A stretch of 64,000 bases of DNA from Bugula neritina (GCA_964035545.1 OZ037771.1:11598480-11662479), one strand, 5' to 3'; positions 11,871 to 42,300 are shown, numbered from the stretch's first letter. Numbers and translations: made by a program. Notes: generated by a model not told the origin, from the letters alone.

Positions 11871-14800
11871 ATGGGGGCAAAAAGACTGCTGGAAATATTT
11901 GCCATCACTCAATGGGTGTGCTCATTCCTCTTCCTGGGCTTTACCTGTCTGGGGTTTATGATTTACCTTGGCTTTACCAGGTATGTTGGCTTTACCTGTC
12001 CAGCTTTACCAGGTATGTAAGCTCCAAAGGCTTGCAATTGAGTTACAAGCTATTTGCTCCTGTTAGTTGGAATACAGGGTACAGCCATAGACATCACACA
12101 GAGACTATTATAGTGATAAGAACTCAAATAATTTATACCCTATTATATTGCAGCAGTGAATGGGTAAAATTATGGTTATATAATATCACCCCTTTGCTAT
12201 TTCACTCAATAAAAATACTTTATTGCTATAGCAGCATTACTGCATACAATTCTGGTTATACCAAAATATTACATTTAAAATTATATATTGCTCTTAACAA
12301 TAATTAGAGAGGTTAGAATTACAGCTGAAAAGAGTAAAAACTCATGATATTTTGATTAAAATAACACATGGAAGTTTAAAGTGACATTCTTATAGTGTCT
12401 GCATGTTTTTTTTATTTAGACTGTGGCCCTTTACCTTAGTATATCTGGCATGGTACTTATATGATAGAAAGTCTCCTCACAAAGGAGGGCGCAGAGTAGA
12501 AGCTATTAGACGTTGGAAGGTCTGGGAACATTTCAAAGACTACTTCCCACTAAAGCTAGTAAAAACTTGTGACTTGGATCCAAACAAAAACTACTTATTT
12601 GCATGTCATCCCCATGGAGTACTCTGTGTCAGCCATTTCGGAAACTTTGCTACTGAGGCTACAGGATTTAGCAAACTCTTTCCTGGAATTGATCCTCACC
12701 TGATTGTTCTAGATGGACAGTTCCAGTTCCCTCTGTACAGAGAATACTTTATGACTACAGGTAGTTTAATTTAACTCTTCAGATTAGAAGCTGTTATATA
12801 TTCATCATTGTACTATGTATGTTATGTCATATTGCAAGTTGTATAATATATGTTATAGTATATATATTGTGTACATTACATTATGCATACTGACGTAACA
12901 AAGGCATTTGACCTGGTCAGAAAAATTGATTAATGTTATAAACTTGTATTATACACATGATATATTGCATCACATATAATATCATATTATGTATATTGTA
13001 TTATGTAAATTGAACAATATGACATATTCTGTTTCCCTGAACAGGATAGAGTGTAGATAGGTGAAGATTACATATATAATATTGCATAATGTATATTTAT
13101 ATGCATATGTAATATTATACATGTACACTGTATTATATTTAGTATATTGTGTTATATATAGTATGTTGTATCAATTTATAAAACATAGTATTTTGCACAA
13201 TGCTATGTTATCATATAACAGTGCTTTTCAAAGTATCCTACTATGTTATATTATTGTAAAGTTTATAGACACAAGAATAAATTATGACTGGATACTCTCC
13301 CTAACATCACAATGGCCTTAACTGTGGTTCGAACCAATGACTTTGTGTTTACTAAGCCATAGTTTAGGGTGCAGACCACGTCTGCACCATAAACTATGTT
13401 ATACTATATAGTATATACCAGGGTTGGGGTCAATTACATGTGAATGTAATTAATTACAATTACAATTACATGAAGATTTGTCAATTACAATTACAATTAT
13501 AATTACAGTTAAAAATAAATGTAATTAATTACAATTACAATTACATGGCAATGTAATTAATTACAATTACAATTACTTTTGTTCTCACAAGAAATAAATA
13601 GAAGTCACTTCTAGGGTCTAACTACCAGGGGCAGTTTTGACAGTGGTGAACCTCTTTTATTTTCTACAGTGATACTATAGGGTCATTCCATACCAAATCA
13701 ACCAACTTTCAAGGGGTCCCACGTCTTTGTGTTTCAGATTTTGCTCATATTTACACTGAATGGACCTACACATGTTGAGATTATCATTCGTGAATATTTC
13801 TGGCCTGACACAAAAACATTTTGAGAAATTACTACTTTGGTAAACAAAGGTTGGAAAATATTTTGAGGAAAATTTGTGATTTATACTTTTAGACCAATTT
13901 ATAAGTAATTTAAAATTTGATTAGGCGAGTATTTGAAATTTTTCAAAATTTACAAAGTTTTGTTCATATTCAATGATTTTGCATATATGCACACAAAGTA
14001 TTCTGTAGTATGTATTGCTACTAGTGCAAATTGATAGATATTTTCAAATCACACAGCAAATTTTAAGGCTCAGTCTAGAAAAATGATTGAGATATAGACG
14101 TTTATAGATTAGTCTAAAAGTAGAAATCACAAATTTTCCTCAAAATGTTTCTCAACCTTTGTCTACAAAAGTAGTCAGTTCTCAAAAAAAATTTGTGTCA
14201 GGTCAAAAATACTGAAGAAGAGTACTTGAGGCATGTGTAGGTCTATTTGGTGTAAACATGAACAAAATCTGAGACGCAAATAGACGCGGGCAATTGGGTG
14301 AGTTAGCATGGAATGACCCTATGCTATATTGACCTAACTATCTGAACTTGTTATTTAACAGTAGGCATTGTAGAAAAAGAAGGAGTTTTTAAGATTTAAA
14401 AGTTTGAAGTAATTGACATGTAATTATAAAGTAATTGTAAAAATCAATTACATTAGATATGTAATTAATTACAATTACAATTACAATTACATTTTTAAAC
14501 CTCAATTACAAATTACATTCAATTACTTGAAAAAATGTAATTAATTACAGCCAATTACAATTACAAATTACAATTACCCCAACCCTGGTATATACCACCT
14601 CATTATTTACAGGGTCATGCGGCTGTAACAAGGATAGTCTAGAATATATCCTCAAATCTAAAGGTCAAGGTAATGCTGCCTGTTTAATAGTGGGCGGAGC
14701 TCTGGAAGCTTTAGCTGCACATCCAGGTCACTTTAATCTCAACCTGAATAAAAAGAAGGGCTTCATTAAAAGTGCTATAAGGACAGGGTAAGTCTAACTT

Positions 14801-15587
14801 ATACCAACAGTGAGTATAAGTAAGTATGATTTACATTGAAAGTATTATAAAAAAATTGATTTATAAATACAATTATTCAATTTGAATAACACTTCCAGCA
14901 TAAAGTGTTATTGTTGAGAGATATAGTGAATCTGTTTCAGAGCCAGCATTGTGCCTGTATTCAGTTTTGGTGAAAACAATTTATACAACCAGGCCCCAAA
15001 CCCTATTGGATCAAGACTTCGTCGCTTTCAGATGATGGCCACAACCTATCTTGGCCTTTCTCCACCATTTTTTTATGCTCGAGGCATTGTACCTTACAGC
15101 AAGCCAGTCACAACTGTAGGTAGGTGTGCTATTTTAATCACTGTGACAACTGTGGGTAGGTGAGCTATTTTAATCACTCTGACAACTGTGGGTAGGTGTG
15201 CTATTTTAATCACTGTGACAACTGTGGGTAGGTGCGCTATTTTAATCACTGTGACAACTGTAGGTAGGTGTGCTATGCAAATCACTGAGACTATCATTAC
15301 AGGTCAACTATTACCTATAATAATGAAAGTTGGCAAATAACTTTACAATTGACAAAAAGTCTTCCTTAAGAAGCGTTGCTAAACAAGCAATAAGAATTCC
15401 ATGCCAGTCATTAAAACAATATATGCTTTTAGTTGGTTCACCAATAGAAGTAGACCAGAATAACACACCAACACCTGAAGAGATCAATGAACTTCACACT
15501 AGATATGTTGCAGCTCTCATAGACCTCTTTGAAACTCACAAACATAAATATGGGATAGCTGAAGGAACCCACTTGAACTTGTTTTAA
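11871..15587 (+). CDS. DGAT2/MOGAT-family acyltransferase, copy 3 (5 coding exons, intact)
   Basis: Exons 11871-11980, 12420-12760, 14613-14787, 14941-15119, 15433-15587. Exons 2-5 match copy 2 in size. HPHG present and no stops. Confidence 0.92.
13419..14587. mobile_element. Non-autonomous hAT-type DNA transposon in intron 2 of copy 3
   Basis: TIRs cagggttgggg.../...ccccaaccctg; perfect 8-bp TSD gtatatac (13411-13418, 14588-14595); subterminal (aattac)n arrays at both ends; not seen in the copy 2 intron. Confidence 0.9.
13680..14319. mobile_element. MITE with long imperfect TIRs nested inside the hAT element
   Basis: Ends gggtcattccat / atggaatgaccc flanked by TA; internal arms ~13800-13885 and ~14120-14205 are reverse complements. 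Confidence 0.8.
15107..15286 (+). repeat. 36-bp minisatellite x5 at the exon 4 donor of copy 3
   Basis: Unit gtgacaactgtgggtaggtgtgctattttaatcact, homologous to the copy 2 array. Confidence 0.9.
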
Positions 15588-22600: not shown

Positions 22601-23081
22601 AAGGTTACTGTATAATCTCTCAGAGTTAGGGTACAGAGTAGGTCTGGGCTATTTGTTACAACTTTTCATTATGTAGCAGTGAGCTCCTGAGAAAGAAACT
22701 TTTACTTTTACTCTCGAGAAAATAGCCAGAGTGAGAGAAGCAGAGAACCAATGCAAACAAAAGTAAAATGCCAGCACTAAAATTAGGTACACTATAATAA
22801 TGGACACAGTCAGTTCTCAGCTAATAGGTAGGGTATAGAGGTATTTAGTAATGCTGTAATTAGGGGTAAAATAACCAAAGTCTGACTTAAAGATGAAAAG
22901 CAAACTCTACACTGTCGTGTTTTGAGATTGTTGTCTTCTCTTTACTAACACAGTGACATATTTGACTACAAAAAATCAATTATCACACAGCTCCATTCTG
23001 TAAACACCACTTAAAGTTACAGCCATCATTTGAACTTCATTATTTGTGACTGAAACAGAATAGTTGAAAGAAGGCCAAGGC

Positions 23082-26000
23082 ATGGAGATGACTGATTTTA
23101 TCCAAGTAAGTTACAAATATACTTTTTATATTATACCTGTGTATAATCAGCTATACCTTTTCAAGAATGGTAGAATTGAAGAAAAGTAATAGCTTTGATC
23201 GTGTGTAATAAGACTTGTATCTTATTCGCTGTTAATTATCAGCTGTCATATTCTGTTTCCAGCTGTTTAAACTACAAACTGTCATTGTGTAGCTATGCTA
23301 GGCATAGCCTAGAGCCACACGGTGCGTATTTTCGCATGCGAAAATTGAAATCACAAGAAGCAAAGGTGTCCACTGTGCGCGTTGAGAAAACCTTCGCACT
23401 TGTCGCTCTGCATTTTCAACGCAAGTGCGAATCGTCTCTGTCGTCGTCACATAATTGGCTGGTAGCTATTCAGCGAGCCCAATTTCTTTATTTAGTACTA
23501 TATTCCAGTAAATTGCGTTTTATTGAAAGCGAGTGCGATTTAAAAATGAAAGCTTTATTTATAACGCATCACTGACGCTACAGTGGACGCCTTTGCTACC
23601 CGTGATTTTAATTTTCGCATGCGAAAATACGCACAGTGTGGCCCTAGGCTTACTGCTAGTGAGAATATAGTCTTGTAACGATATAATAAAACTTTGCTGT
23701 ATTTGTGGATAGTCAAATAAGATGCTAGTATACCAGTAGAGTGGACTTTATTCAAATTTCCGGCCACAGCCCAGTAGTGCATTTGTCTATTAAAGGTATC
23801 TACTACACCAGAATCTGTATGAAGTATTTTCAGCCTTTTTTTATGCTTTTTTTGATGTCTAATTGGAAAAAGTTGACATTTTAAACTCAACGTTGTTATT
23901 CCACTCTTCTCCGGTTTAAATAAGTAATCAGTCTTTTACCACTTACTATGCTTTTTTGTAGATTGATGAAAAAAATGCTAAGCTCTGCAACCTATTGCTT
24001 GTAGGAGTGGTAGTAGGAGTAGCATGTGTATTGATCTGGAAAAGATACTGGTCAGAGTCAAGTATGTAAATAAGTCTATATTTTCAACCCCATCGATAAT
24101 ATTAATTGAAATGAAAATGAAGACTTACTAAACTTTTAGTAAAAATGTATTTGATTTTTTCATTAAAAGACACATAATAATACTTTAGAAAGAGCTCCAA
24201 TAAAATATTAGCTATAAAGCAGGCTATGGTTTCTTCCAGTTTTCTCAACCATTCAGAGTGGAAAGTTAAGCTACTTTTAATTTTTGACTGACTAGTGAAA
24301 ATGTTTCTGGCCAGCTGGTATTAAATTAACAGACATGAGCTCAGCCAATATTTGTCTACAATAACCCATTGTATCTTTATGACTGCACATAGTACAGCAT
24401 AGTTAATCTTCTCCAATCAACAATTTATCTAGGAAGAAATGTAGCAAATGGGTTTTCATATTATAGTCATATGAATCCAGAATTTTAGCCATTAATGTAG
24501 TTATACCGTTAAATGCACAACTAGATTGGTACTAGTCTAATTTCCAAGATGTTGAGATTAACTTATTAGCTCATTTATAATTAGCCTTGCTTTCACAATT
24601 AAATAAAACTTGATGGGTATTAGCATTAGTTTTATGCCATGAAGAAAAATTAAAGGGGCAGATCGTGAGTAGCCGCTAGGCTATTAGATGTACCTTTTCA
24701 CATGAGATGAACTTTAGTGAAGGAGACAATGTTAACATTTTTGATTAGCTTTTTCATGCATTTATCAAGGTACATTTGTTATTTTCGTCACAATTTCAGC
24801 AGTACCCACAATTAACCTAAGACCACAAAGAGCGAAGTTGATTTCTGTGTGTCTAGCCAAGGAACTAGGTGGTGACCGTCTGCACCCCATCCAATCCGAG
24901 TACGAGGCAGCAAGTTTAGACCTGTTTGGTTTAACAACGGAAAATCGTTTAATATATGACTTGAATCTGTACTCTGTTTTTAGAAAGACAACTTTTGTAC
25001 AAAAGGTAATTGGCATGATTGATGACCTTGAAGATGCTAAAGCATGTTATCAGAGTGAAAAATAATTCACACTAACTAATTTAAATTTACATTTACATAT
25101 AAAATGGTATAGTTTTCACATTTAATTTTGGGGTAAATCTAGCTGTAGTATTACAACTTCATGATTTTAATGATTTTTGTGAGATCAGCTATTTCATCAA
25201 TATAGTCAATCAACCTCTCTAGCACTTTTTTATAATTGACAATGCTTGAGAAGAGGCATCGCTGGTGTTAAACGAGTTTCCAAAAAGCACCCGTTAGAAC
25301 TCAAAATTTTTAGTGCAAAACATAAGTGTGATTTAAAATATAGAATAACTATTAAACTAACATTATAAGCAATTAATATTTCAAGATTTAAAATTCAATT
25401 TTATAATCAATAATTTAAGAACTAAAGCTGCTTTTTAGCAAAGCATCCAACAGAAGTCTAACATTTATATTTGAGTTAGGAGTTGAGCAAATTATTATCC
25501 ACGATTATTTTGCAGAACCCATCGACACATGACACAACATATCTGTCTGGAAGAAATTGTGAATTAAAGGGGAGTTTAACTGCTGACTTAGCTGCTCGAA
25601 TATTTGACAACTACAATGCAAGTGCTTGTGGGCGCATCACAGTAGAGTTGAAAGCAAACTTTGACCGCTTTCAACTGGATAAAGTGAATGAAAGTTTTCT
25701 TGGAGATTACGTAGAACATAGGTGAGAGCTAACTTGCTAAATGGCCAGCATAACAAATACACTTTTACTGAATGAAATATATTAGACTGCTTTAGAAGTT
25801 TAAATTGAACCCAAAAATAAATCATTTTAACATAAACTCTCCTCTAACTATTCTAAAAAAATAAATTCTATATAATATTGGCAATGGAATAGTGAAGGTC
25901 AATAAAGCCTTTCTCTGCTTTATAAAATGTTATTTGAAACACAGACATTTTTTTTAGCAATTTATAATTTTTAAAAAAGTTATTTCACTAAAAATTTAAT

Positions 26001-29000
26001 ATAACTGTGATTTCCTTTAAACCTAATTTAGAAAAAAAAATTTATCCCGCAAACTATATAGTATGCTGATTATTTTTATTTTGTTATATAATCTAGTGAA
26101 ATAAAAAAAGATCACCACCTAATTAAAAAGGCATTTGCTGGTGAAGAAAAGTTGTACGTTATCACTGGAGTAGTGCGGACAACCACACCAACTGAAGTCT
26201 ATCTCAACTGGGATCTTAAAAAATGTCAGCCCTCTCAGGTTTGAAGCACACATTTCCAAGCTATCTATATTATTTTATTTGTATTCAGCAGCTGCTATTA
26301 TCTTATTGTAACCTTATGGTTTGATATTGCAGTTGTGAGTGGTAAAGCAATAATTGTATATTTGCCAGCTTCAAAATGCTGGCTTGCGCTTAGTTTTGGT
26401 TACAAATGAGTCACTGACACTAAAAGCAGATTTTCTAGAAGGGTATAAATGAAACATTATTTTCGTATTTTCTACTTGAAATAGTTATTGAGTCATTTTA
26501 CTTAAATTAGTACACAGTATATATCTAGCTTTTAGCTATTTTTCACAATTTAGCGGCTATAATGTATATATAGTTTCTTGTATTAAACTAATAAAATATT
26601 AACAAGTACAGCTGAATAATTAGGACATTTTCTAATTTTGATTAATTTTCTACGTTTGTTGTTCCTAATATTTTAGTAAATTTCATGTCTGATGCTTTTT
26701 TCACACCCAAGGTAACTGAAAAATTAAGAAAAAACATGGAAAATCAAGCAAAATTAGAAAACAACCTTGCTTATTTGTTTGTATTTGTTAATATTTCATC
26801 AGTTTCATGCAATAAACTGTACACATTAGCAGCTAAAATTGAAAAAAATAGCTAAAAACTAGATATATATTATATACATGTATATAGTGTCTACTAAATT
26901 AAGTACAATGACCCTATTGATAATCAGAGATTTATTTTTGAAATTATCATCTATTCGCAGGATGTGTTGAAATGCAAAAAAAATTTTGCAGTTCATATAT
27001 GTCTTGGTGATTTCAGCATCCTAACCCCATTGCACAGCTTTTGCAGTTGCAATGCGCACACCTTTTGAAAATACACTACAAGCAGTTTCTTGTATGAAGC
27101 AGATTAGGGCTGTGGAATTTTGTAGTCCCTGTTATATTAATTCAAAGTAATAGACACTAAAGCCACATTGGTTCATTAAACTAGATAATTTTCAAACATA
27201 ACAGTATTTAATTGAGAACTAGAACTTGCTGATTCAATAAGCCCAAATTTTACAAGATGTATTTTATTGCAACTTTATTTTGCTATATATAGGAACGTAA
27301 GAATGAGGGAGAAACTATAACAAGCAACCAGTCTAGAAATGAGGGCATGCAAGTCAGTGGGGGATTGAGCTACAGAGAAAATAGGAAAGATTTAAACATA
27401 AATTATGATAGTATTCATTGGCGAAAAATATATCTTGAAGCAGGAACAGTGGTGGCATATGAACACATCCCTTTAAAGGAGTTGTGTGGTATGTTTCTAC
27501 AATGTGGTAAGTAAAAGCTATGCATTATTAGACTTGAAATCTGCAACAACTTGCAACAAATTTTCTGTCCAGCAACAACTTTTCTGTGCAACATAATTAT
27601 TGTGCTTCTAGATGCTTTTTTGAATTTGAATGTTTTGCTGATATGGGTTTCTTAAATGAAATGCTAACAGAAGTTCCAATTGGTCACACTCTATAACTCA
27701 AGCTAATGCTTTTACACGTTTAGTTAGGTACATATAGGACTTTTATTACCAAGTCGAGTAATTAATAATAATAATCAAATGATACCATAATACATAAATG
27801 CGTTAGGAGATGAAATTAAAATTATTCAAAAATAGCTGATGGGCAACTGGGTAGAAGTTGGAAAGCCTTTCCATTGAAACAGATGACTAAAATCAGGCAA
27901 TATGTGGGTAAGATCTGGCAAAAGCAAGCTCCACAAGAAAACATCCAACAAGGTAAGGGAAATTGTTCAGAAACTAACTTAAAGATTGGAGAGGCTTAAA
28001 TAAACTGTTAAAGGACATAGGTAATCAGAAAAGAAATTATTTTGAAGTTTTAAGGCACAAAATCTCAAATTCAAACATGGTAAACATAATGAACTCACCG
28101 AATTAAGTAAAAAACATTTTATGTGATGACTAGGTGATTAATTGCTGATAATCAAGTAATTTTACTATAATCAATAAGGATATAAATGGGGCCTATCCAG
28201 GTTATAGGACATTAGTTTTCACTTGCTAGCTGGAATGCAGAGTAAAACTTGAAAAATTCAAGTATAGCAAACAAATTTTTGTAACAAAAGTTGGTGCAAA
28301 GAAATGCAGGCCTGCATGTTCTATAATATACTTGGTTATTTTGTAGATATCACTACGGTTAACACCACAACAAATGATGGTGAGTTACTTCAACTTAATA
28401 TTATATCAGTTTTAGAGCTACTATTTATTTTCATGAGTTAATATCTGGTCTCATTGTGTTTTGATGAGAATTATCAGAATTTGCATATTATTTCTTACAA
28501 GCTTACTAACCATAAATACTTATATACATGTGTCTCCAATTTTGTATTCGGTGTTTATATCTTTTCAAACATGCTAAAATTTAATTTTTCTGCTCTATAT
28601 CAGCAACATGCAATACTATGACATCACATACACTGGTTATATATCACTGCAGACTAACAACACACACACTCCTATATCAAATTGATACTGTAAAACAAGG
28701 CAATGCCAATTGAATGCATGGATGTTTGTGCAAGTATATTTTACTAAAACGCATTTTCCAACTAATTACCATTTGTCTACAATACTACAACTTCCGCAGT
28801 GCATGAAGCACCTGATATTTCGCAACTTTTATAACTCTGCAAGAAACTGTAGTATTGTGTTTATAATATTTTAGGTGATGTCACCAATGACACAGCACTA
28901 GACTCTTCAGCTGCTGCTTATCTCTCAGGTCCTGGCTCTGATGATCAGCTACATGTAGGAAATGACACTGCAGGTACTAATCAGCCAAGCATTGGCCTAA

Positions 29001-29008
29001 AGCTATGA
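23082..29008 (+). CDS. Gasdermin-like pore-forming protein with N-terminal transmembrane segment and short C-terminal tail (~346-352 aa, 8 exons)
   Basis: Exons 23082-23105, 23962-24061, 24800-25005, 25516-25721, 26097-26238, 27293-27488 (or 27506), 28347-28379, 28875-29008. All GT-AG, phases join into one ORF. Colinear gasdermin N-domain motifs: [37 protein letters not shown]...[65 protein letters not shown] at ~29287. Confidence 0.82.
23307..23649. mobile_element. PIF/Harbinger-type MITE, copy in gasdermin-like intron 1
   Basis: TIRs gcctag(a/g)gccacac..tgcgtattttcgcatgcgaaaatt / aattttcgcatgcgaaaatacgcacagtgtggccctaggc; flanks ATA/TTA; closely similar to 34786-35129. Confidence 0.88.
26490..26914. 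mobile_element. Degenerate long-TIR MITE in gasdermin-like intron 5
   Basis: Arms ~26490-26610 and ~26775-26914 are imperfect reverse complements; termini gagtcatt / aatgaccc(ta) resemble the element at 13680-14319. Confidence 0.6.
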
Positions 29009-31220: not shown

Positions 31221-34200
31221 TCAGTTGAGTTGGTAAAACAACACCTTCTCCTCACTATATCTCGGTACAATCAAAGTATTCCCAGAAACATACAAATCAT
31301 AGACAGGAGATGAAGATCTTTCAGTAGAATCAGAAATATGAGTCACAACTTCTCCTGCAATAAAACAGTGTAAATTAATACAATATATCAGTTAGACTTA
31401 TAAAGCATTATACAGGGAGCATTACAAATAGAGAGCACAACTTCCCAGTATATCACAGCGCAATATAAACTGTGCTGAGCTACAACAGTATGCCTATAAT
31501 GTAGTTGGAGTATATATATATTATATCGTGTAGTTAGAGTAGTAGTAGTTAGTCTGGTAGTTAGAATACAATGGTACTAACATATTATGTAAAGATCTCA
31601 CCTGTATTACTATCCAGTAACCAGAGAGTAGGTGTAGTACTATTATTCATCACATAAACCATTCCTCTCTGATACGCCACACCTTGAGGTTCACTCACGT
31701 GTTGAGACTCCCAACAGCTTTTGCCGTTCGAAATGTCAAGTTTAAAGACTCGGGAGGAGTCAGTGTCAGATATAACAACATAGTTAGTCTCCACACTGCA
31801 GATAGCTGTAGCTCCAGAACCAGTCAGTAGAGGACAAGGGAGGCTTTTCTGTACCTCCCCGGTAAAAGAATAGAAAGTGAGTGACTTACTATCACCACTA
31901 GGGACTATAATCAGATCATTCGTTACTGCTAGTTTGTTGCACCAACCTTTGCTGTTGCCAGACCACTTGGTAACTAAATTCCCAGACAAGTCATGGACAC
32001 AGACTGTATAGTTACTATCAGCCACTAAACTGACTACTCTGTCATTAAATACTCTCACACATTCTACAAAGCTATTAAATTTGGTAAGGAAATCACCTAA
32101 TCGGTATTCTCTATGGATCAGTTTTACTGTTTTATCATCTAACCCCACATAAGTGATACCCTCATGTTGAAATACTGAGTTACACTGTGATGAGACATCC
32201 ACAGTGTGGGACAAAGTCATAGACTGAGGGACAAAACCAGTAGTTTTCAATCCATGTGATACACTAACTTCTTCATACTGTGGGTAGACAATTCCTACTT
32301 CAACTTCTCTCTTTTCGTCTAAAGTTTAAGAGATATTAACCTATGGTAGTTCAATATTAATGAGCATTTATACTTATACAAAGAGTAGTTACTGAAGGAT
32401 TAATTTACAAAAGTTGCAAGTTTGGATCGCTAGGATGTGAAACTTTTATATCATATAATAGCCGAGATAGTTATGCATTTACTAGTAAGATTTGTCCTAC
32501 CATGTGTGAAAAATGAAAAAAGACATTTGAAAAAAAGCTACCAGTCTGAGAATTGCATAAAATTTGTATTCATAAATTTATGAGTATGATAGCGTCATGT
32601 GTGTAAAAGCCAAAAAGGACACTTCAGAGAAAGCCATTGGCATAAAAACTATAAAATTACTATGAAAAATCATTTAAATACCATTTTACTAACCTTTGAC
32701 TTTCAGAGTTGCTATGTTACGCAGTTTAAGTGAAGGTAGATTATCAGACACCAACTTTCTCATACTGTCACATATTTCTTCATACCTGGTCACCAGATCT
32801 ACCTGTATGTGTACTAATCATAGTAAATTATAAGATATAAACACATTCATGGTATTATAATTAGTGGTATGTAATACATATATAATAATAATATCAATTC
32901 CTAGGAGGAATTTCTCATTTCAAAATAAAATTATGATAAAATTTCCAATTGATATAACTGACTGCAAAATAACATGTAGAGATCATCTTTTGAATTTGAT
33001 TAACTATTCCACAGGAACTTGTGAAGACAAAATATCAGCTTTACTTGTCATATTTACAATAAACTATAAATATATTTTTACATGCAGTAATACACAGTTG
33101 ACTCGCAACAATACAGGAAAATTACTAAGTTAACACAACAATAATATTTATTACTTAGAATTTAAAGCCAACACATTACATTGGTAATAGAGCACCTGGT
33201 GGCAGCTGTCAAGTTTAGCCTCTACTTGAAGTTTATGTCTACTCAGCTCTGCCCATTTCACTCCAACATTTTCCTCCATGAAACGAAGTAGATCAGATTT
33301 CACAGTCTGTCTCAGTTCCACTAAATCCTCTTCTAACTTCCTGTACTTCATCTGTATTGCTTCCACCTAATAATGAATATAACAGTCAGGCTATGCTGTG
33401 GTAAGAGTAGTAAAGTAAAGCAAAATGTGTATTACCACAGCCATAATCATGCCATATATCAAAAAAGCCGATGAAAAAAGAAAGGGTAAAATTTGAGGTG
33501 AAGGAAATGTTCCTCATTAAATATATTTTATATACAACAGAATTTGATGAATGGTAATAATCTATTACTTTGCGTCAGTATTTACTGAAAAACTACTTTG
33601 GCAAATTACACACTATTTTAGATATAAAATATAGATTAACTAGAACTAAAAAGGCACTTTCCAAGCAGCATTTAACTATATAATGTAGATTATATATAGA
33701 TTTGTCATACTACAATATAGTCCAGTTTGATGTTCAGTAGTAAAATCAGTAGTAAATCTATGGCTTTAGACACCTTCAGAGCACCTGTTCCACTGACTAC
33801 GAATGCGAAATTTGACAGGGCATGGCAAACTTGTCACATGCAATAAACAACCAGTGAATGACACACTGGATTAATACACCCTTTTCACAAGTCCCTCTAG
33901 GGCAGGGCTGCCCAACAGGTGGCCCCGGAGGCGAATGTGACCCCCAGCCTACTTTTATTATATGGCCCTCAAAAGCATAAAACTAAAAATAGCTTTCACA
34001 GTATACATTAATTAAAGTAAAAGAACTACATTTCAAATTAGTTCTTTCAACAACATATGGATATAGCAGAATGCTTGTAGCTAACAACCTAAATCCCACA
34101 AAAAGAGTGCATTGATAATCATCAAGGAGTCTCCAATGTAAAGTTCAGACTTCCACTTCACTATTACCATACGATTAGCATGTAACAGGATGACGTAATT

Positions 34201-36411
34201 TTATTATATAAAATTAATGAAACGATTTCTAATTATTCAACTTCCTGTGAGACATTATCAACCAATTACTATCCAATCCAGTCTAACCTGTTCAATACAA
34301 GTCTTCCGGAGTGTTCCAATCATCTCCTTCGTCTCTTTTTCAAAATTCGACACAACTTCAGATGTTTTCTTGAATAAACTGGAGAGTTGTTCTTCCCTGT
34401 CAGTTACTTGAACTTTCAACTCATCAATTTCTGTTCTTAGTTTCAACATTAGCATGTCTAGAGACATGAGTTGATGGTTCGATCCTACAGCAGATATTAG
34501 TAAGAAATGATAACAGCATTAAAGTATTAATAGCTGTAACCTAACTGTCCATACCTTTGCCAACATAATTATAAACAAGTTTAAACTATACAATCTAGTA
34601 CCAAAGCAATAATTGAACACCAGCATCTAAATGGAATTATCATTTCAATTGATTACTAATCTGAAATTGGCCACTTAATCGATGACAAAACAAAAACTTT
34701 GAGAAGTAGCTTTTACTCGGTGAAATTTTCAACTCGGTCAAATTGAATTTCTGACTGAAAACCGTGACGGTATAAAACACTGTTAGCCTAGGGCCACACG
34801 GTGCGTATTTTCGCATGCGAAAATTGAAATCACAAGTAGCAAAGGTGTCCACTGTACACGTTGAGAAAACATTCGCACTTGTCGCTCAGCATTCTCAACG
34901 CAAGTGCGAATCGTCTCTGTCGTCGTCACCTAATTGGCTGGTAGTTATTCAGCGAGGCCAACTTCTTTATTTTAGTGCTACATTCCAGTAAATTGCGTTT
35001 TATTGAAAGCGAGTGCGATTTAAAAATGAAAGCTTTATTTATCACGCGTCACTGACGCTACAGTGGACACCTTTGCTACTAAGGATTTCAATTATCGCAT
35101 GCGAAAATACGAACAGTGTGGCCCTAGGCTTAGTGCTAAAAATCAACAAAGATGGTCTCACAACTCCCAATATTATTGAAATGTCATATAAAACAAGATG
35201 TCTAACAGACTCCTACCATCAGTACAATTAGATTCTTCAGCTGAACACTCTGCACACACAACAGAGAGACAACTCCTACAAGCCAGACTATACTCTGTAT
35301 TCTTATGTACAGTGCAGAATCTTGGTGTTAGTTGTTGAGCTTTTAGTCTGTATTCACTGATAGGAATTGTAGAGTGGTTCATACTTAGGTCTTCATGCAT
35401 CTAAAACATACTAATTATGATATAAAATATTGTCTTTTACTTTCAAACACATAGAAATTGTCTGCTCTGAAGTAACAAAAATAGCTGAGTTATAATTATT
35501 TTGCTTTTGCAGTGTTGCACTACTAGATTGAGTGAGTGTTACTGCATAAACCAGAAAAAGGCTCTTAATTAGACAGTTATGCCAAAAACTTAATCAGATT
35601 GAACAGAAAAATGAAAAACCTGATCCCACTGTTTTGCATAGTGCTGCCTAAACAGATATATTTCATTGAAATGAAAGCAAACTTCTGTCATCTGTGTTAT
35701 TTGTCTTGTAGCTGACTTTATTCATCAGCTCATGCTTCTGCTTTTTCTATGACAATAAAACCTAGCTTTGGTTTGTATAAGACAGAGACTAGTAAACATT
35801 TACCTCTTGATGTTTAGCACAATATTTGGCTGAACAAGTTGTACAGTAAGTAACTGCAGCCTCATTTAAAACTCCTTTTTTAGAGCAAGTGTCGCAACAG
35901 GAGTTGTCTACTCTACATGGGAGATTGTTTACTGGAATGTCAAACACTTTTCTATAAGAAAAACAAAATAAATGTGAGATAAAATGAACAGAAGAAAGTT
36001 CTGAAAAAATGGCATACTGCTAAGTTATATCAACAATCTATAACTTTATTATGAAACAGCATACTTCAGCAACTAAATAGTTTTCAGAGAAGTAAAATTT
36101 AAAGTATATATAATACTCAATAGCTTGTTTACTATGTTAGTAATGTATAAAAAATCCGGAAATAATTAAATAATTTTGAAATGCAAATTATTACACATAT
36201 TATAGTATCTGAAAAACGAGTGGATGTCAGACAACCTGACTTGAATGTACCTGCAAAGGGGGCATCTCAAAACACCCTGAATACTGAGATAATCCAACAA
36301 ACAACTGAGACAATGTGAGTGACCACATGGCAAGTATCTGGGGTCATCCATTTTTTCCTCTTTTTTCAAACAAAATCCACATTCTGCTTGATTCTCCACA
36401 GGGTCGGTCAT
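31221..36411 (-). CDS. TRIM-like E3 ligase (RING, two B-boxes, coiled coil, NHL-like beta-propeller), copy A, ~606 aa
   Basis: Exons 36411-36251, 35951-35804, 35400-35217, 34484-34288, 33366-33196, 32802-32694, 32318-31602, 31354-31221 (1821 nt, in frame). RING CGFC..LPCGHSHCLSC..CPLC; B-box1 CDTC..YCTTCSAKYCAKH; B-box2 CTVH..CRSCLSVVCAEC; beta-strand repeats such as EPQGVAY. Confidence 0.88.
33903..34040 (+). mobile_element. Truncated hAT/Charlie-like element end in a TRIM-A intron
   Basis: cagggctgcccaac..ggccc start typical of hAT MITEs; missing from the paralogous intron of copy B; no matching right TIR found. Confidence 0.4.
34786..35129. mobile_element. PIF/Harbinger-type MITE with TTA target-site duplication
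   Basis: TIR gcctagggccacac / gtgtggccctaggc; TTA at 34783-34785 and 35130-35132; empty site cactgttagtgctaaaa in the paralogue at ~53356-53372. Confidence 0.93.
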
Positions 36412-38414
36412 ACTTCTGAAAACAAATAAATAATGCAAATAAAGCAAAAAATATAATTCAAGTAAATTAATTGAGAAAAAAAAAACAATGATGCCAGTAA
36501 AGCCAATAGTATGATTCAAGATAACTAAATAAAATCATTTCAAATAAATTTGATGTATTTTAAATCAGACTTAAAACGTTTAAATACTAAACAAATTTAC
36601 AAGAAAATGAGCCAACAAAGGGAGTTCTAAGAACTCAAGAATAGAGAAGGAACTGGTGGAAGAAGCACCAAATGAGCAAACAGATCAAATGGAGATCCAC
36701 CTAGACAAAGAAATCTTAGGCACATGTAAATAGTAAAGATCTTACAAGAAACCGCCGAGACAAATTAATAAAGTACTGGACACTGTTGAGATTAATAATG
36801 TTACAGAGATGAATGACGTCATCATTGTGTAAAAAATATAGTGGAAAAATTTGATTCATTGATCGGTAAAGATCCAGCCAAATGGGGAGATTTTCGGAAA
36901 TTTTCGACATATTATATGTTAGCTACTCATAGAGGCTTTTCAAAAATAAATTGAAGAGATTTTGTGAAAACATTACAGTTTAAAAAAAGAAATAACTTGT
37001 ATGTGGAGAAAGTTAATATGAGAGTCAGAGAAACTCATCTTCAAAACTATTTATGCTAATAGTTACCTAGTACTATTAGTACTGTACTAATAGTTATAAT
37101 GATTTGTGTGTTTTGACTTTTGAAATTTTGTGAAGCTGTAGGTGTATAACTACTGCTTTTATTTCGAACTACGAAAAGAAACTTTTTATCATCAATTTCA
37201 CCTAAGCTTTTGTTGAGTAATTATCATTATGTTCAGAGTAACCTTGAGTTTAGGAGATACAGCCACATAAGGATTCCTCTTCTAAATATTTGACAGTCCA
37301 GCTATCCTAAGAGTTATGACCACTTAAACTCCCAAGAGTACTCATATTCATATTGATATTCATACCGAATATAAGCGTTAACTCTCAATAATACTATTAG
37401 CGATATTCATAGTACTAAGTATATTACCATTAGTAATAGTATTGTCAGTTGTACTCCATTCTCATTAGACTTACACATGCTCTTAGCAAAACAGTTGACG
37501 TAGTAACAGTAACACTAATAAGTAATAGTATTAATATTATGTAACTTGAAAGAAAATCTCCTATCAATTTTTGTAATTTCACTTTTACTCTTGGAAGTAC
37601 TAATTGAAGTATTAGTGTCTAGTACTCTTAAATTGATTAAACTCAAAGAAGCCAAATGAATATCAATATCAATATATACTCTTAAGTCTATCATACTCGC
37701 GTCTCGTAGTCACCTGTTATTTAGTAATTTACTCTTACAGTATTATAATCTTAGTCGATAGAGTAAGGACTAATGGCCCTTTGGGCTTCGAGTGATTTAA
37801 TTTTATCAATAAAGCAATTATTAAACTTAATCATTATGATATTCATATTGATTTATAATATGATTACCATTAACAATATTATAATGATAATGATAATAAT
37901 TATCATTATCATTATGATTAATAATAATAATATTATTATTAATCATAATATTATTATGATTATGTGATGAATTTTATTACACGCAGTCTGAGTCTTTAAT
38001 TCATGGGAAGTAGTAAAATTTTTGCAAGTATAAGAAACTTGCAGTGGCATTAGTAGTAAAAACAATAAATATGACACGATCGCTATAAGTATAAGATTGA
38101 AACAATATGAATATAAATGTAGTTTTACTACAGTTGCGCAGCCTAGCAATCTAGCGAAAATGGCAAGTTGACTCTGACTATGGGAAATCCCCTCCTGCTG
38201 GGCGTTGGTATAGATCTTGAACTGTCCCATTTGCAAATCACACTTTACAGAATGTTGCCGATGCTATAAACGCATCTAATCAGATGACGACCTGATCAAC
38301 AACAATTGTCATTGCGGCGGAGCGCTTAGCTTGTAGAGTAGACAACTCGTTGCTTTAATTCAATAAGAATCCGCAACAAACCTCACACTGATTCTGGTTT
38401 GTATATATTATATA

Positions 38415-39383: not shown

Positions 39384-42300
39384 TTATGGGGTAAATAGGT
39401 AAATTAATTTGTGGATAGGCCTATCTAAGTATGTGGGTGGAGCTAGTCTCACACCTTTACTGTTCAACTCTGTAGTTGCTAGTTGCACCTTTACCTTACG
39501 AATTAAGTCATCTCTAGTTTTATGTGTTTCTATCACTCTAGCTATGGGCCATTCGTTCCTATGTGTATTTTCATTTTTGACAAGTACTATGTCACCTTTG
39601 CGAATATTTGATTGCGGCTTATGCCACTTTTGCCTTCCCTGAAGATTGTGCAAATACTGTGTTTTCCATTTTGTCCAGAACGAGTTAGCTAGGCTTTGAA
39701 CTTGTCTCCATCTTTTATTGGAGTACATATCATTTTGGTCAAATTGTCCTGGTGGCGGTGGTACATGCTTTGATTTCATTGTCAAGAGTTGATTTGGTGT
39801 TAGTGGTGTATTACCATCATCTAGTGTGTTAAGAGGTCTACCATTTACTATGGCCATTGCTTCATAAAAAAATGTTCTCAATGTTGTTGAGTCTAGCCTG
39901 GTTTTATGCATATCTAACATGGAGTTTAGCACATTTCTAACACTTCGTATTTGTCTCTCCCATACACCACCCATATGGCTGGCACTCGGTACATTTGTAA
40001 CAAAGTCTAAATCGTTTTCCCTTGCAAAAGACTGGATTCTTGTTTGGTTTGACTTGAGTTCTTTAAATGCGCCAACAAAATTTGTGCCACAGTCTGATCT
40101 AAGTTGTCTGATAGGTCCCCTAATAGCAATGAGGCACCGCAGTGCATTTATGAAAGCATCTGTAGTCATGTCATCTAATATTTCTAAGTGAATTGCCCGT
40201 GAGGCCATGCATGTAAATATTAGACCGTATTTCTTTAATTCTGCTCTCCTATCCTTTACAATAAATGGTCCAAACACGTCACATCCTACATAGGTAAATG
40301 GTGGAGCTGGTTCAACTCTTTCTACTGGCAAGTCTGCCATCTTTTGGGTCATTGGAGCATGTCTTTGTTTTCTACATGTTATGCATTGGTGAATGTAAGA
40401 GCTTACTACTCTTGAGATTCCTATAATGTAATAGCCTGTAGACTTAATTTCACTAATTGTCAAATTCTTTCCTTGATGTGCAACCTTCTCATGGCACTGT
40501 TTAATCACAAGTTTGGTTACATGTGAGTTGCTTGGTAACATTACTGGGTGCTTTTCATTATAGTTCAACTGTGAATCTCGGAGTCGTCCTCCTACACGTA
40601 TCAAGCCATGTTTGTCTAGAAATGGATCTAGCTTTGCTAGTTTACTATCTTTACTTACACATTTGTCTTTACTTAGCCTGCAATATTCATCTGAAAATGA
40701 CTCTTTTTGTACCCACTGCATTATTAGATGTTTAGCATCTGTCAAGTCATCAATTGTGAGTCTGGGAGTTATGCTACCTTTATGCTTTACCAATCTTTTG
40801 GCTGCACTTACTGCTTTGATAGCATTTTTTAGGTCTGAGAATCTGCTTAGGTGTTGCTCTAATGAGCACTTAGATTGAGGCTCTGTGTTGGTTTGTAAAC
40901 ATAATTTGACCTCTGGGTCGGAGGAATCTATCTCATAGTTACTGTCTGTATTCAACATATGTGATAAATCTGGCTGCCATAAAAATTTTGGTCCTTGGAA
41001 CCAGTCTGTACTGAGTAGCTTTTTGATACTAGCACCTCTGGATGCTATATCTGCTGGATTTATGCTTGTGTTGATGTAATTCCATTGTGCTGCTTTGCTT
41101 TTGGATAGAATTTGTTGTACCCTGTTTGCTACAAATGGTTGAAATTTCTTAGTTGTGTTGTGTATGTAGCCCAAGACTACTTTAGAATCAGTCCAGAAAT
41201 ATTCATTTGTTATAGGCATTGCTAATTCTGTGGTTACTACAGTGGACATTTTTGAGGATAGTACAGCTGCCATTAACTCTGCTCTTGGCATTGTTATAGG
41301 CTTTATTGATGCAACCCTAGATTTTGCAGAAAGCAATGTGCAGTGTATGTTGTCATTTACATCAACTAGTCTCAGATAAGTGCATTGACCCAAACCATTG
41401 TTACTGGCATCACAAAAGTGATGTAGCTCTGTTAGTCTGATAGTACTTAGGCTTTTAGGTTTCAAGCATCTTGGAATTTTTATTTGAGGCAGTTCTGCTA
41501 ATTCTCTTTGCCATGTTACCCAACTGTTTTCTAGTTCTGGTTTTAGTGCATCATCCCAATCAGCTTTGTCTTTGCACATTTCTTGCAAAATGTTATTTCC
41601 AATTAGAATAACTGGTGAGAGGAACCCTAAGGGATCAAAAACCGAGGCTATTGTAGACAAAACGCCTCTTCTAGTATGTGGTTTCTCTTTCATGCTAGCT
41701 TTGAACTGAAATTCATCATTTTTTATGCACCAATGAACACCTAGCACACGTTCTACTGGCATATCTGTGTTTAAGTTTAAATCTTTCATTGTTTCAGCAT
41801 GTTCAGATTCAGGTATTGTGGCTAGAACTGCTTGGTCATTGGATACAAACTTATGGAGTCTTACATTTCCCTTGGCACATATATTAATTGCACTCTTGAT
41901 TACACTGACTATTTGTTCGTGTGAGTCTAGGCTCATTAGTCCGTCATCTACATAAAAGTCATTTTCAATAAAGTTCACTGCCTGTTTGTCACTGTCAGTA
42001 CCAGAGTCCCCGTGATCTCTAGCCAATGTTCTTAAGCCGTAAGTCGCACAAGCAGGAGATGATTTAGCCCCAAATAAGTGAACTGTCATGCGGTACTCAA
42101 CAATGTCAGTCATAGTCTCGTCTTTAAACCAGAGAAATCTAAGGTAGTCTCTATCTGACTCATGTACTTTGAACATGTGAAACATTTTTTGTATATCACA
42201 CATTACAGCTATTTGCCCTTTTCTGAATCTATGCAATACTCCTACTAGGTTGTTCATAAAGTCTGGTCCTTGTATCAAGTGATCATTGAGACTTGTGTTC

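What the first reader, a model, noticed from the sequence alone, without database searches (positions are those of the whole stretch)
23082..29008. Hidden 8-exon gasdermin-like gene with an unusual architecture
Seen: eight small exons splice through canonical sites into one 346-352 aa ORF, visible in the ORF track only as two fragments. Established (motifs recalled from GSDME/PJVK/GSDMD, aligned by eye): the gasdermin pore domain has an order of features that is matched here. Helix 1 plus G.L.P..S..EA (PJVK VKQVGDGGRLVPVPSLSEA) matches [18 protein letters not shown]. The first insertion hairpin ending F..L....V matches [15 protein letters not shown]....E.LYVVT matches [23 protein letters not shown]. 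The second hairpin and IP.G..(L/I)A(Y/F)...L match [15 protein letters not shown]. Inference: a divergent invertebrate gasdermin laid out as TM anchor - pore domain - short tail, unlike the canonical two-domain animal gasdermins. It may represent a new type of lytic cell-death or immune effector.
Basis: partly seen in the sequence, partly recalled or inferred. Interest (0 to 1): 0.93.

Follow-up and report, generated by a model that had tools for sequence, protein, structure and literature searches.

The report
Membrane-anchored divergent gasdermin in a bryozoan
This is a real, apparently intact multi-exon gene of the bryozoan Bugula neritina that encodes a very divergent relative of the gasdermin pore-forming (cell-death) domain, unusually preceded by a membrane-spanning anchor and followed only by a short tail; its expression and activity are still untested.

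Summary
Eight GT-AG exons at 23082-29008 (+) give one 346 aa ORF (352 aa with an alternative donor), and all quoted motifs are present. A ninth, optional 72-nt exon (27836-27907) is possible.

The gasdermin reading is supported, exon by exon:
- Exon 5 weakly hits Pfam Gasdermin at the right profile position.
- Exons 3-6 each match only the corresponding exon of the genome's Pfam-verified gasdermin genes. hhalign gives P 1e-7 to 9e-5 for matching pairs and at least 0.11 for all 12 mismatched pairs.
- Intron phases 0,2,0,1 agree; the sites after the second and third of these exons sit in register and the other two within about 10 residues.

The transmembrane exon is conserved, with the same splice sites and phase, upstream of the exon-3 homologue in a second intact copy (Logan contig L027). 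A frameshifted copy lies on another chromosome.

There is no C-terminal inhibitory domain. The charge rule predicts that the pore domain faces the cytosol.

Not shown: transcripts (the only sequencing run found is DNA), the fold, and activity.

The scan had already found ordinary inhibitor-less gasdermins elsewhere in this genome. The anchored subfamily is new. I rate it a new variant of a known kind, interest about 0.6.

The parts
23082..23105 (+). Exon 1: start codon and 8 codons (MEMTDFIQ), donor CAA|gtaagt, phase 0
   Evidence: Sequence reading only. The one SNP seen here is synonymous. Not covered by any paralogous contig. Least certain part of the model.
23962..24061 (+). Exon 2: transmembrane anchor (19-20 hydrophobic residues, then KRYW), 100 nt, phase 0 to 1
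   Evidence: KD19 2.65, the only TM-grade segment. An intact homologous exon (106 nt, same acceptor and same TCAA|gtatgt donor, same phases, KD19 1.99) lies 1.1 kb upstream of the exon-3 homologue in L027. A frameshifted homologue is present in the C8 copy.
24800..25005 (+). Exon 3: linker plus the gasdermin helix alpha1 / beta1-beta2 region; corresponds to canonical exon A
   Evidence: hhalign to canonical exon A gives P 5.6e-5 in register. Both exons end in phase 0 after K. A mixed profile hits GSDMA3 residues 4-65 (E 4.9e-5) and also GSDMB, GSDMD and GSDME. Homologues P0001 and P0002 are 61% and 53% identical.
25516..25721 (+). Exon 4: first amphipathic beta-hairpin region; corresponds to canonical exon B
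   Evidence: hhalign gives P 7.8e-6 over 58 columns, end to end. Exon sizes are 206 vs 203 nt, and both end AG| in phase 2. The beta-amphipathic moment exceeds shuffles (p 0.002-0.004). Paralogues are 50-58% identical.
26097..26238 (+). Exon 5: helix plus the core strand [14 protein letters not shown]; corresponds to canonical exon C
   Evidence: Pfam PF04598 E 0.051, HMM 137-169. hhalign gives P 1.1e-7. tblastn from canonical exon C gives E 6.8e-6 at 45% identity. This canonical exon is also the genome-wide best non-self hit of exon 5. The intron lies in the same phase 2 and at the same residue position as in L020 and L017.
27293..27488 (+). Exon 6: second hairpin region and the strand [12 protein letters not shown]; corresponds to canonical exon D. 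An alternative donor at 27506 adds 6 codons.
   Evidence: hhalign gives P 8.9e-5. A mixed profile hits TrichoGSDM 8jyv residues 198-229 (E 0.0017), GSDMA3, GSDME and GSDMD. Both exons end in phase 1 on a split G codon. The one SNP here is synonymous.
27836..27907 (+).
   Evidence: Same phases and size class as canonical exon E (69 nt). No sequence similarity to it (hhalign P 0.41). Weak polypyrimidine tract, and 13 in-phase AG..GT open intervals (7 acceptors) exist in this intron. Undecided without RNA.
28347..28379 (+). Exon 8: 33-nt microexon ([11 protein letters not shown]), phase 1 to 1
   Evidence: Good acceptor and donor. A 70% identical peptide and 73% identical DNA are present in the C8 fragments.
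28875..29008 (+). Exon 9: polar, Asp-rich tail and the stop codon
   Evidence: In phase with exon 8. No Pfam domain. The last 15 residues are 73% identical in a C8 fragment.

Best explanation
The locus is an intact, fast-evolving, lineage-specific paralogue of the gasdermin pore-forming (N-terminal) domain genes of Bugula neritina.

Exons 3-6 (perhaps 3-7) encode the gasdermin-N core. It has the same exon layout as the genome's ordinary gasdermins. The ancestral start codon at the head of the first core exon has been replaced: two upstream coding exons now supply a short acidic N-terminus and one transmembrane helix. There is no helical autoinhibitory C-terminal domain. The protein ends in a 55-80 residue polar, Asp-rich tail.

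Inferred mechanism:
- The helix acts as a reverse signal anchor. Its N-flank has net charge about -1 and its C-flank about +2, so the pore domain should stay in the cytosol, tethered about 18 residues from helix alpha1.
- That position is where bacterial gasdermins are described as carrying a palmitoyl anchor.
- The protein would sit inactive on a membrane until a trigger lets it oligomerise and insert the two hairpins into the membrane that carries it. The most likely trigger is proteolysis in the Asp-rich tail or release of a partner.

Shown: homology, exon architecture, conservation of the TM exon, and signs of purifying selection. Inferred: topology, regulation, pore formation and biological role.
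For: Homology:
- Pfam hit of exon 5.
- Canonical gasdermin exons in the same genome score over the Pfam cut-off (32.2, 28.9 and 26.8 bits).
- The exon-wise hhalign matrix is diagonal only.
- tblastn from canonical exon C finds exon 5 at E 6.8e-6, as strong as between recognised paralogues.
- The genome-wide second-best hit of exon 5 is a canonical gasdermin exon.
- Mixed exon profiles hit solved gasdermins at residues 4-65 and about 190-230.

Gene structure: intron phases 0,2,0,1 (and 1 if exon 7 is used) and near-equal exon sizes in this gene and in the L020 and L017 genes.

TM anchor: hydropathy; an intact homologous exon with identical splice phases in L027; a relic of it in L014.

Functionality: 5 of 6 exonic SNPs are synonymous; dN/dS is 0.44-0.57.

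No inhibitory domain: no Pfam hit in exons 7-9.

Precedents: gasdermins with only the N-terminal domain, gasdermins with short inhibitory peptides of 17-67 residues, and a palmitoyl moiety on bacterial gasdermins (PMC13475620, PMC12547243; its N-terminal position is from my own knowledge, not from those texts).
Against: - No transcript evidence: the only run that holds the locus is DNA.
- Exon 1 has no comparative support.
- The TM exon evolves at pN about equal to pS (0.36 vs 0.35). Its constraint is on hydrophobicity, frame and splice sites, not on sequence.
- No exon alone reaches the Pfam cut-off, and exons 3, 4 and 6 give no Pfam hit.
- Single exons find no gasdermin in the PDB by sequence.
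- The fold was not tested on the whole protein. A fragment fold of exon 3 was poor (pLDDT 52.5).
- Six N-x-S/T sequons would also fit a lumenal or extracellular domain.
- Only exon 4, not exon 6, shows significant beta-amphipathicity.
- All other copies in this assembly are broken.
Confidence: 0.6

Rival explanations
1. It is a gasdermin-N homologue, but the transmembrane exons are not part of its mRNA. Another 5' exon supplies the start codon and the protein is soluble like the other Bugula gasdermins.
For: No RNA evidence exists. Exon 1 is supported by sequence logic only. Five alternative ATG exons with a phase-1 donor exist upstream. One of them, at 22800-22827 (MDTVSSQLI), even recalls the canonical MFDTVVSKL start. 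The TM exon shows pN about equal to pS.
Against: Exon 3 has no ATG and a strong acceptor in phase with exon 2. The TM exon keeps its open frame, a length of 1 modulo 3, its acceptor, its donor and its hydrophobicity in a second copy that differs by about 30% in DNA. It also lies at the same place in the C8 relic. The alternative first exons have weaker donors.
Confidence: 0.17
2. The same protein is inserted the other way round (type II, N-terminus inside). The gasdermin-like domain is then lumenal or extracellular and glycosylated, and acts outward on microbes, symbionts or neighbouring colonies, or acts after shedding.
For: Six N-x-S/T sequons lie in exons 4, 6, 8 and 9, and five cysteines lie in exons 3-6. 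An N-terminal signal anchor is compatible with type II insertion in general knowledge. The polar Thr/Asn/Asp-rich tail looks like an extracellular stalk.
Against: The flank charges (N about -1, C about +2; sequence) predict N-out/C-in by the positive-inside rule. All known gasdermins act from the cytosolic leaflet (PMC12547243). Sequons are expected by chance in an Asn/Thr-rich sequence.
Confidence: 0.13
3. It is a silent or decaying copy of a recently expanded family, still open by chance, with no function.
For: The family turns over quickly. The C8 copies in this genome are fragmented, frameshifted and carry stops. Introns are as similar between copies as exons (about 70-74%). No protein containing exon 3 longer than 103 aa was found among 1.8 billion representatives.
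Against: Eight or nine exons are all open with canonical splice sites. 5 of 6 exonic SNPs are synonymous, roughly p 0.01 if about 28% of random changes were synonymous (my own estimate). dN/dS is about 0.5, against 0.87 between the C8-type copies.
Confidence: 0.08
4. It is not a gasdermin at all but another type II membrane protein with a beta-rich ectodomain, for example a TNF-like ligand.
For: Exon 6 alone gives its best PDB sequence hits to TNFSF9/4-1BBL (E 0.18-0.5). TNF ligands are type II membrane proteins (general knowledge).
Against: That match is not significant. It lies about 250 residues into the protein, with too little sequence after it for a TNF homology domain. Four exons match the corresponding gasdermin exons only, and the intron phases agree with the gasdermin genes.
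Confidence: 0.02

Closest known systems
The ordinary gasdermin genes of the same genome (clusters at C2:2.05 Mb, C2:4.29-4.31 Mb and C8:11.67-11.69 Mb; earlier scan note s1-447062 reads them as lacking the inhibitory domain)
   Same: Same exon layout and intron phases for the core. Exon-by-exon profile similarity. 45-47% identity in the LxVxxGxVxTTTPT exon.
   Different: Those genes start with MF.. directly at the first core exon and have no TM segment. They reach the Pfam cut-off on single exons, and this gene does not. This gene's beta1-beta2 loop lacks their basic cluster (ERKASKWW, ERKKKKYFF versus TTENRLIYD). Exon 6 is 19 codons longer.
TrichoGSDM (Trichoplax) and fungal RCD-1: gasdermins made only of the pore-forming domain (PMC12547243, PMC13475620)
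   Same: A single gasdermin-N-like domain without the large C-terminal repressor. The mixed exon-6 profile finds TrichoGSDM as the best solved match (8jyv).
   Different: Those proteins are soluble and about 250 aa, with no anchor. TrichoGSDM is held inactive by a disulfide-linked dimer through cysteines in the beta1-beta2 loop. Here the only Cys of exon 3 lies in helix alpha1, and there is an extra tail.
Bacterial gasdermins and fungal HET-Q1: pore domain plus a short C-terminal inhibitory peptide, with a palmitoyl anchor in bacteria (PMC13475620, PMC12547243)
   Same: A short C-terminal extension (17-67 aa in bacteria; 55-80 aa here) instead of a domain. A hydrophobic membrane-seeking group at the N-terminal end of the pore domain (palmitoyl there, by my recollection on an N-terminal cysteine; a TM helix here).
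   Different: The anchor here is a genetically encoded helix with a linker, not a lipid. The tail is polar and low-complexity, with no detectable similarity. It is not known whether a protease cuts it.
Animal two-domain gasdermins GSDME and PJVK
   Same: Collinear motifs in alpha1, the LYVxT strand and the IPxGTxxAY strand. The mixed profiles hit GSDME, GSDMD, GSDMA3 and GSDMB structures.
   Different: No Gasdermin_C domain, an N-terminal TM anchor, and no caspase-site linker between two domains.

Membership tests
Gasdermin superfamily (pore-forming domain, Pfam PF04598) | Match to the Pfam Gasdermin model over the gathering cut-off (25 bits) | tested here: inconclusive
Tested exon by exon only. 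Exon 5 scores 13.5 bits, E 0.051, at HMM 137-169. Exons 3, 4, 6 and 7 give no hit.
Gasdermin superfamily (pore-forming domain, Pfam PF04598) | Collinear profile-level homology to proven family members | tested here: met
   hhalign of exons 3, 4, 5 and 6 against exons A, B, C and D of Pfam-verified gasdermin genes gives P 5.6e-5, 7.8e-6, 1.1e-7 and 8.9e-5. All 12 mismatched pairs give P of 0.11 or more.
Gasdermin superfamily (pore-forming domain, Pfam PF04598) | Shared gene structure with family members of the same genome | tested here: met
   Intron phases 0, 2, 0, 1 in this gene and in the L020 and L017 genes; in the A5/A7-A9 alignments the sites after exons B and C sit in register and those after A and D within about 10 residues. 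Exon sizes are 206/203, 142/136 and 196/139 nt.
Gasdermin superfamily (pore-forming domain, Pfam PF04598) | Gasdermin-N fold (twisted beta-sheet with helix alpha1 and two extension hairpins) | not testable with these tools
   The whole spliced protein has no reference and was not folded. The fragment fold of exon 3 with alignment A8 gave pLDDT 52.5, with only a helix at residues 8-24.
Gasdermin superfamily (pore-forming domain, Pfam PF04598) | Two amphipathic membrane-inserting hairpins | tested here: inconclusive
   The beta-periodic hydrophobic moment of exon 4 exceeds shuffles (p 0.002-0.004). Exon 6 does not (p 0.27-0.45).
Gasdermin superfamily (pore-forming domain, Pfam PF04598) | Pore formation and membrane permeabilisation | not testable with these tools
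   Needs expression and liposome assays.
Two-domain animal gasdermins (GSDMA-E) | Helical C-terminal autoinhibitory domain (Pfam Gasdermin_C) after a cleavable linker | tested here: not met
   No Pfam family hits exons 7 or 9 at E up to 10; the 11-codon exon 8 was too short to scan. Only 55-80 polar residues follow the core.
Pore-domain-only gasdermins (TrichoGSDM type) | Autoinhibition by a disulfide-linked dimer through cysteines in the beta1-beta2 loop | tested here: not met
   Exon 3 has a single Cys, in the helix-alpha1 region (SVCLAKE), and none in the loop region. The feature is as described in PMC12547243.
Short-inhibitory-peptide gasdermins (bacterial, HET-Q1 type) | C-terminal peptide of a few dozen residues, removed by a dedicated protease | tested here: inconclusive
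   The tail length fits (55-80 aa against 17-67 aa, PMC13475620) and Asp-rich sites exist. No protease partner and no sequence similarity were found.

The most novel reading that the evidence does not exclude
This would be the first gasdermin permanently built into a membrane by its own transmembrane helix. The helix would take over the membrane-targeting job of the basic beta1-beta2 patch, which this subfamily has lost, and of the palmitoyl group of bacterial gasdermins. The cell's protein sorting, not lipid recognition, would then decide which membrane is perforated. A cut in the Asp-rich tail would arm it. In a colonial, symbiont-bearing animal this could serve organelle- or compartment-specific killing, symbiont control or allorecognition.
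Probability: 0.3. Interest if true: 0.8.

Novelty: new variant of a known kind. Interest (0 to 1): 0.62.

Why it matters
All gasdermins described in the papers I could search are soluble or lipid-modified proteins that must first find a membrane (PMC12547243, PMC13475620). None was found with an encoded transmembrane anchor, and none is reported from Bryozoa.

A pre-anchored pore domain without the usual inhibitory domain raises a sharp, testable question: how is a pore former kept silent while already sitting in its target membrane? It would also add a further regulatory design to the family, beside two-domain autoinhibition, the short inhibitory peptide and the disulfide dimer.

The locus also shows that very divergent family members escape domain searches on single exons, yet can be recognised through conserved intron phases.

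Tried and rejected
- **RNA evidence.** The single run that holds the locus (X1) is DNA. It has even depth over the introns and no splice joints.
- **Whole-library HMMER with exon 3.** Only two short ORFs were found and no full-length protein. Their contigs carry homologues of exon 3, and two of the three also of exon 4.
- **PDB by sequence with single exons.** No gasdermin was found. A repeat-driven PPR hit and weak 4-1BBL hits were judged noise, so the TNF-like reading was rejected.
- **ESM Atlas feature search with exons 3 and 6.** No usable hit.
- **Scan of metagenome contigs with the exon-3 alignment.** Nothing was confirmed.
- **Word-indexed protein search with exon 6.** Nothing.
- **Fragment fold of exon 3.** pLDDT 52.5, not informative, so no fold search was run.
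- **Exon 7 against canonical exon E.** No similarity.
- **Another 'gasdermin-fold' note 2.17 Mb upstream on the same chromosome.** The locus was fetched and shows no similarity to my exons or to the canonical ones.
- **Other copies in G000.** Exons 5, 6 and 2 have no other copy. The C8 region holds only scrambled, broken pieces.
- **Left out on purpose.** No search, Pfam scan or fold was made of the joined, spliced protein, which has no reference.

Full report
**What is there.** The window is G000:C7:11598480-11662479 of a 216,009,554-base genome in 321 sequences. This fits the published Bugula neritina assembly tzBugNeri2.1, which has 216.00 Mb in 320 scaffolds plus the mitochondrion (PMC11480708). 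An earlier scan note (s1-447062) names the same organism.

All have AG/GT borders, and together they give 346 aa, or 352 aa with the second donor of exon 6 at 27506. The four quoted motifs are all present.

A ninth exon is possible at 27836-27907. It is 72 nt and phase 1 to 1, and would give 370 aa. It has the phases and size class of exon E of the canonical genes (69 nt). It has no sequence similarity to that exon, and 13 in-phase AG..GT open intervals (7 acceptors) exist in that intron. I leave it open.

**Rule followed.** Every search was made exon by exon, by reference. The joined, spliced protein has no reference, so it was not searched, scanned or folded. That step is left out.

**Is it a gasdermin?** The evidence runs as follows.
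- On Pfam, only exon 5 gives a hit: Gasdermin PF04598, 13.5 bits, E 0.051, at HMM 137-169. That is where the LYVxT strand belongs.
- The same model, run over the whole genome in six frames, finds ordinary gasdermin genes on C2 and C8. Three single exons there score over the 25-bit cut-off.
- I cut out these genes and worked out the exons of two of them. I then aligned their exons A-D across five or six paralogues (A3-A6).
- Profile comparison of my exons 3, 4, 5 and 6 with A, B, C and D gives P 5.6e-5, 7.8e-6, 1.1e-7 and 8.9e-5. Each match is in the right register. All twelve mismatched pairs give P of 0.11 or more.
- tblastn from canonical exon C finds my exon 5 at E 6.8e-6 and 45% identity. 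This is as strong as its match to a recognised paralogue.
- In the whole genome, the best non-self match of exon 5 is that same canonical exon.
- The introns after these exons have phases 0, 2, 0, 1 in my gene and in both canonical genes. After exon B the split codon lies exactly six residues before the conserved His in all three. Exon D always ends on a split G codon.
- Exon profiles that mix my sequence with the canonical ones find solved gasdermins. GSDMA3, GSDMB, GSDMD and GSDME match at residues 4-65 (best E 4.9e-5). TrichoGSDM, GSDMA3, GSDME and GSDMD match at residues about 190-230. My sequences alone do not find them.

Together this makes homology to the gasdermin pore-forming domain very likely (about 0.9), although no single exon passes a curated threshold.

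**The anchor.** Exon 2 holds the only TM-grade hydrophobic stretch (KD19 2.65). Exon 3 has no ATG and needs an upstream exon in phase 1.

The decisive comparative evidence came from a Logan contig (L027, SRR4020083) that carries an exon-3 homologue (61% identity). About 1.1 kb upstream of it lies an open exon of 106 nt. It has the same poly-T ...gtag acceptor, the same TCAA|gtatgt donor, the same phases 0 to 1, a hydrophobic core (KD19 1.99) and a basic exit. Its junction with exon 3 is in frame.

The copy on C8 of this genome keeps the same exon, broken by one frameshift, at the same distance from its exon-3 relic.

At the sequence level the exon is free to vary (pN 0.36, pS 0.35). The constraint is therefore on frame, splice sites and hydrophobicity.

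Exon 1 (8 codons) has no comparative support. Five other ATG exons could in principle feed exon 3.

**State of the gene.**
- 5 of 6 exonic heterozygous differences seen in the DNA run are synonymous.
- dN/dS against the paralogues is 0.44-0.57, but 0.87 between the C8-type copies.
- The C8 region holds only scrambled pieces with stops, and exons 5 and 6 have no other copy. This is the only complete member in the assembly.
- Relatives of exon 3 in 1.8 billion proteins are just two short ORFs (P0001, P0002) from JGI metagenome contigs; a Logan assembly holds a further copy, P0003.

**How it probably works (inference).**
- The N-flank of the helix is acidic (net about -1) and the C-flank is basic (KR..R, about +2). 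By the positive-inside rule the short N-terminus goes out and the gasdermin domain stays in the cytosol, tied about 18 residues before helix alpha1.
- By my recollection this is the end at which bacterial gasdermins carry their palmitoyl group; the review read here describes the palmitoyl moiety and its role in membrane affinity (PMC12547243).
- The beta1-beta2 loop has lost the basic cluster that the canonical paralogues and GSDMA3 keep there. This would fit an anchor that makes lipid recognition dispensable.
- Exon 4 has a significant beta-amphipathic pattern.
- With no inhibitory domain, and no Cys in the loop that TrichoGSDM uses (PMC12547243), control most likely lies in the 55-80 residue Asp-rich tail or in a partner.
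- The opposite topology, with a glycosylated ectodomain, is the main mechanistic rival.

**Novelty.** Papers held here describe two-domain, domain-only and short-peptide gasdermins (PMC13475620, PMC12547243), and invertebrate gasdermins in 12 phyla (PMC9355259). I found none with a transmembrane anchor and none from Bryozoa. The scan itself had already noted inhibitor-less gasdermins elsewhere in this genome. The anchored subfamily was noted only on this window.

**Verdict.** It is a new variant of a known kind. Transcripts, fold and activity remain to be shown.

Noticed in passing
window 23306-23650 (intron 1): A MITE-like element with 71-nt terminal inverted repeats (90% complementary). Its word depth in the DNA run is enormous (about 3-4 x 10^5). 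One contig joins 23297 to 23644, i.e. an allele that seems to lack the insertion.
   Followed up: partly
window 26450-26920 (intron 5): A second repeat with raised depth (about 7-10 x 10^3). It matches the C8 region in both orientations, so it is a palindromic or inverted element.
   Followed up: no
window 22800-22827: A mini-ORF, MDTVSSQLI, followed by GT in phase 1, lies 280 nt upstream of exon 1. It recalls the MFDTVVSKL start of a canonical gasdermin (L020). It could be chance, a relic of the ancestral start, or an alternative first exon.
   Followed up: no
G000:C8:11505800-11520900 (L014, L018, L024): A graveyard of pieces of this subfamily on both strands. It holds exon 2 with a frameshift, the first 30 codons of exon 3, two copies of exon 4 (one with a stop), an exon-6 relic with a stop, exon 8/9 pieces and duplicated 3' flanks. 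It lies 170 kb from a cluster of ordinary gasdermins.
   Followed up: partly
window 12403-15587 (+): Neighbouring gene of the diacylglycerol acyltransferase family (Pfam DAGAT, E 1.8e-41 and 1.7e-15 on two exons).
   Followed up: partly
window 31585-36519 (-), and a similar ORF at 49856-50569 (-): A TRIM-like gene with a RING finger, a B-box and a beta-propeller-like C-terminal exon. A second propeller-like ORF lies further on.
   Followed up: partly
window 39384-45065 (-) and 55968-62000 (+): A BEL/Pao-type retrotransposon ORF of 1893 aa (Peptidase_A17, integrase), and a second LTR-type element with aspartyl protease, RT and RNase H.
   Followed up: no
L023:807-900 versus window 24717-24800: The sequence just upstream of exon 3 (end of intron 2) is similar between copies. 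In L023 it is even open in frame with exon 3. Intron similarity (about 70%) equals exon similarity throughout the family, so the copies are young and exon conservation alone says little.
   Followed up: partly
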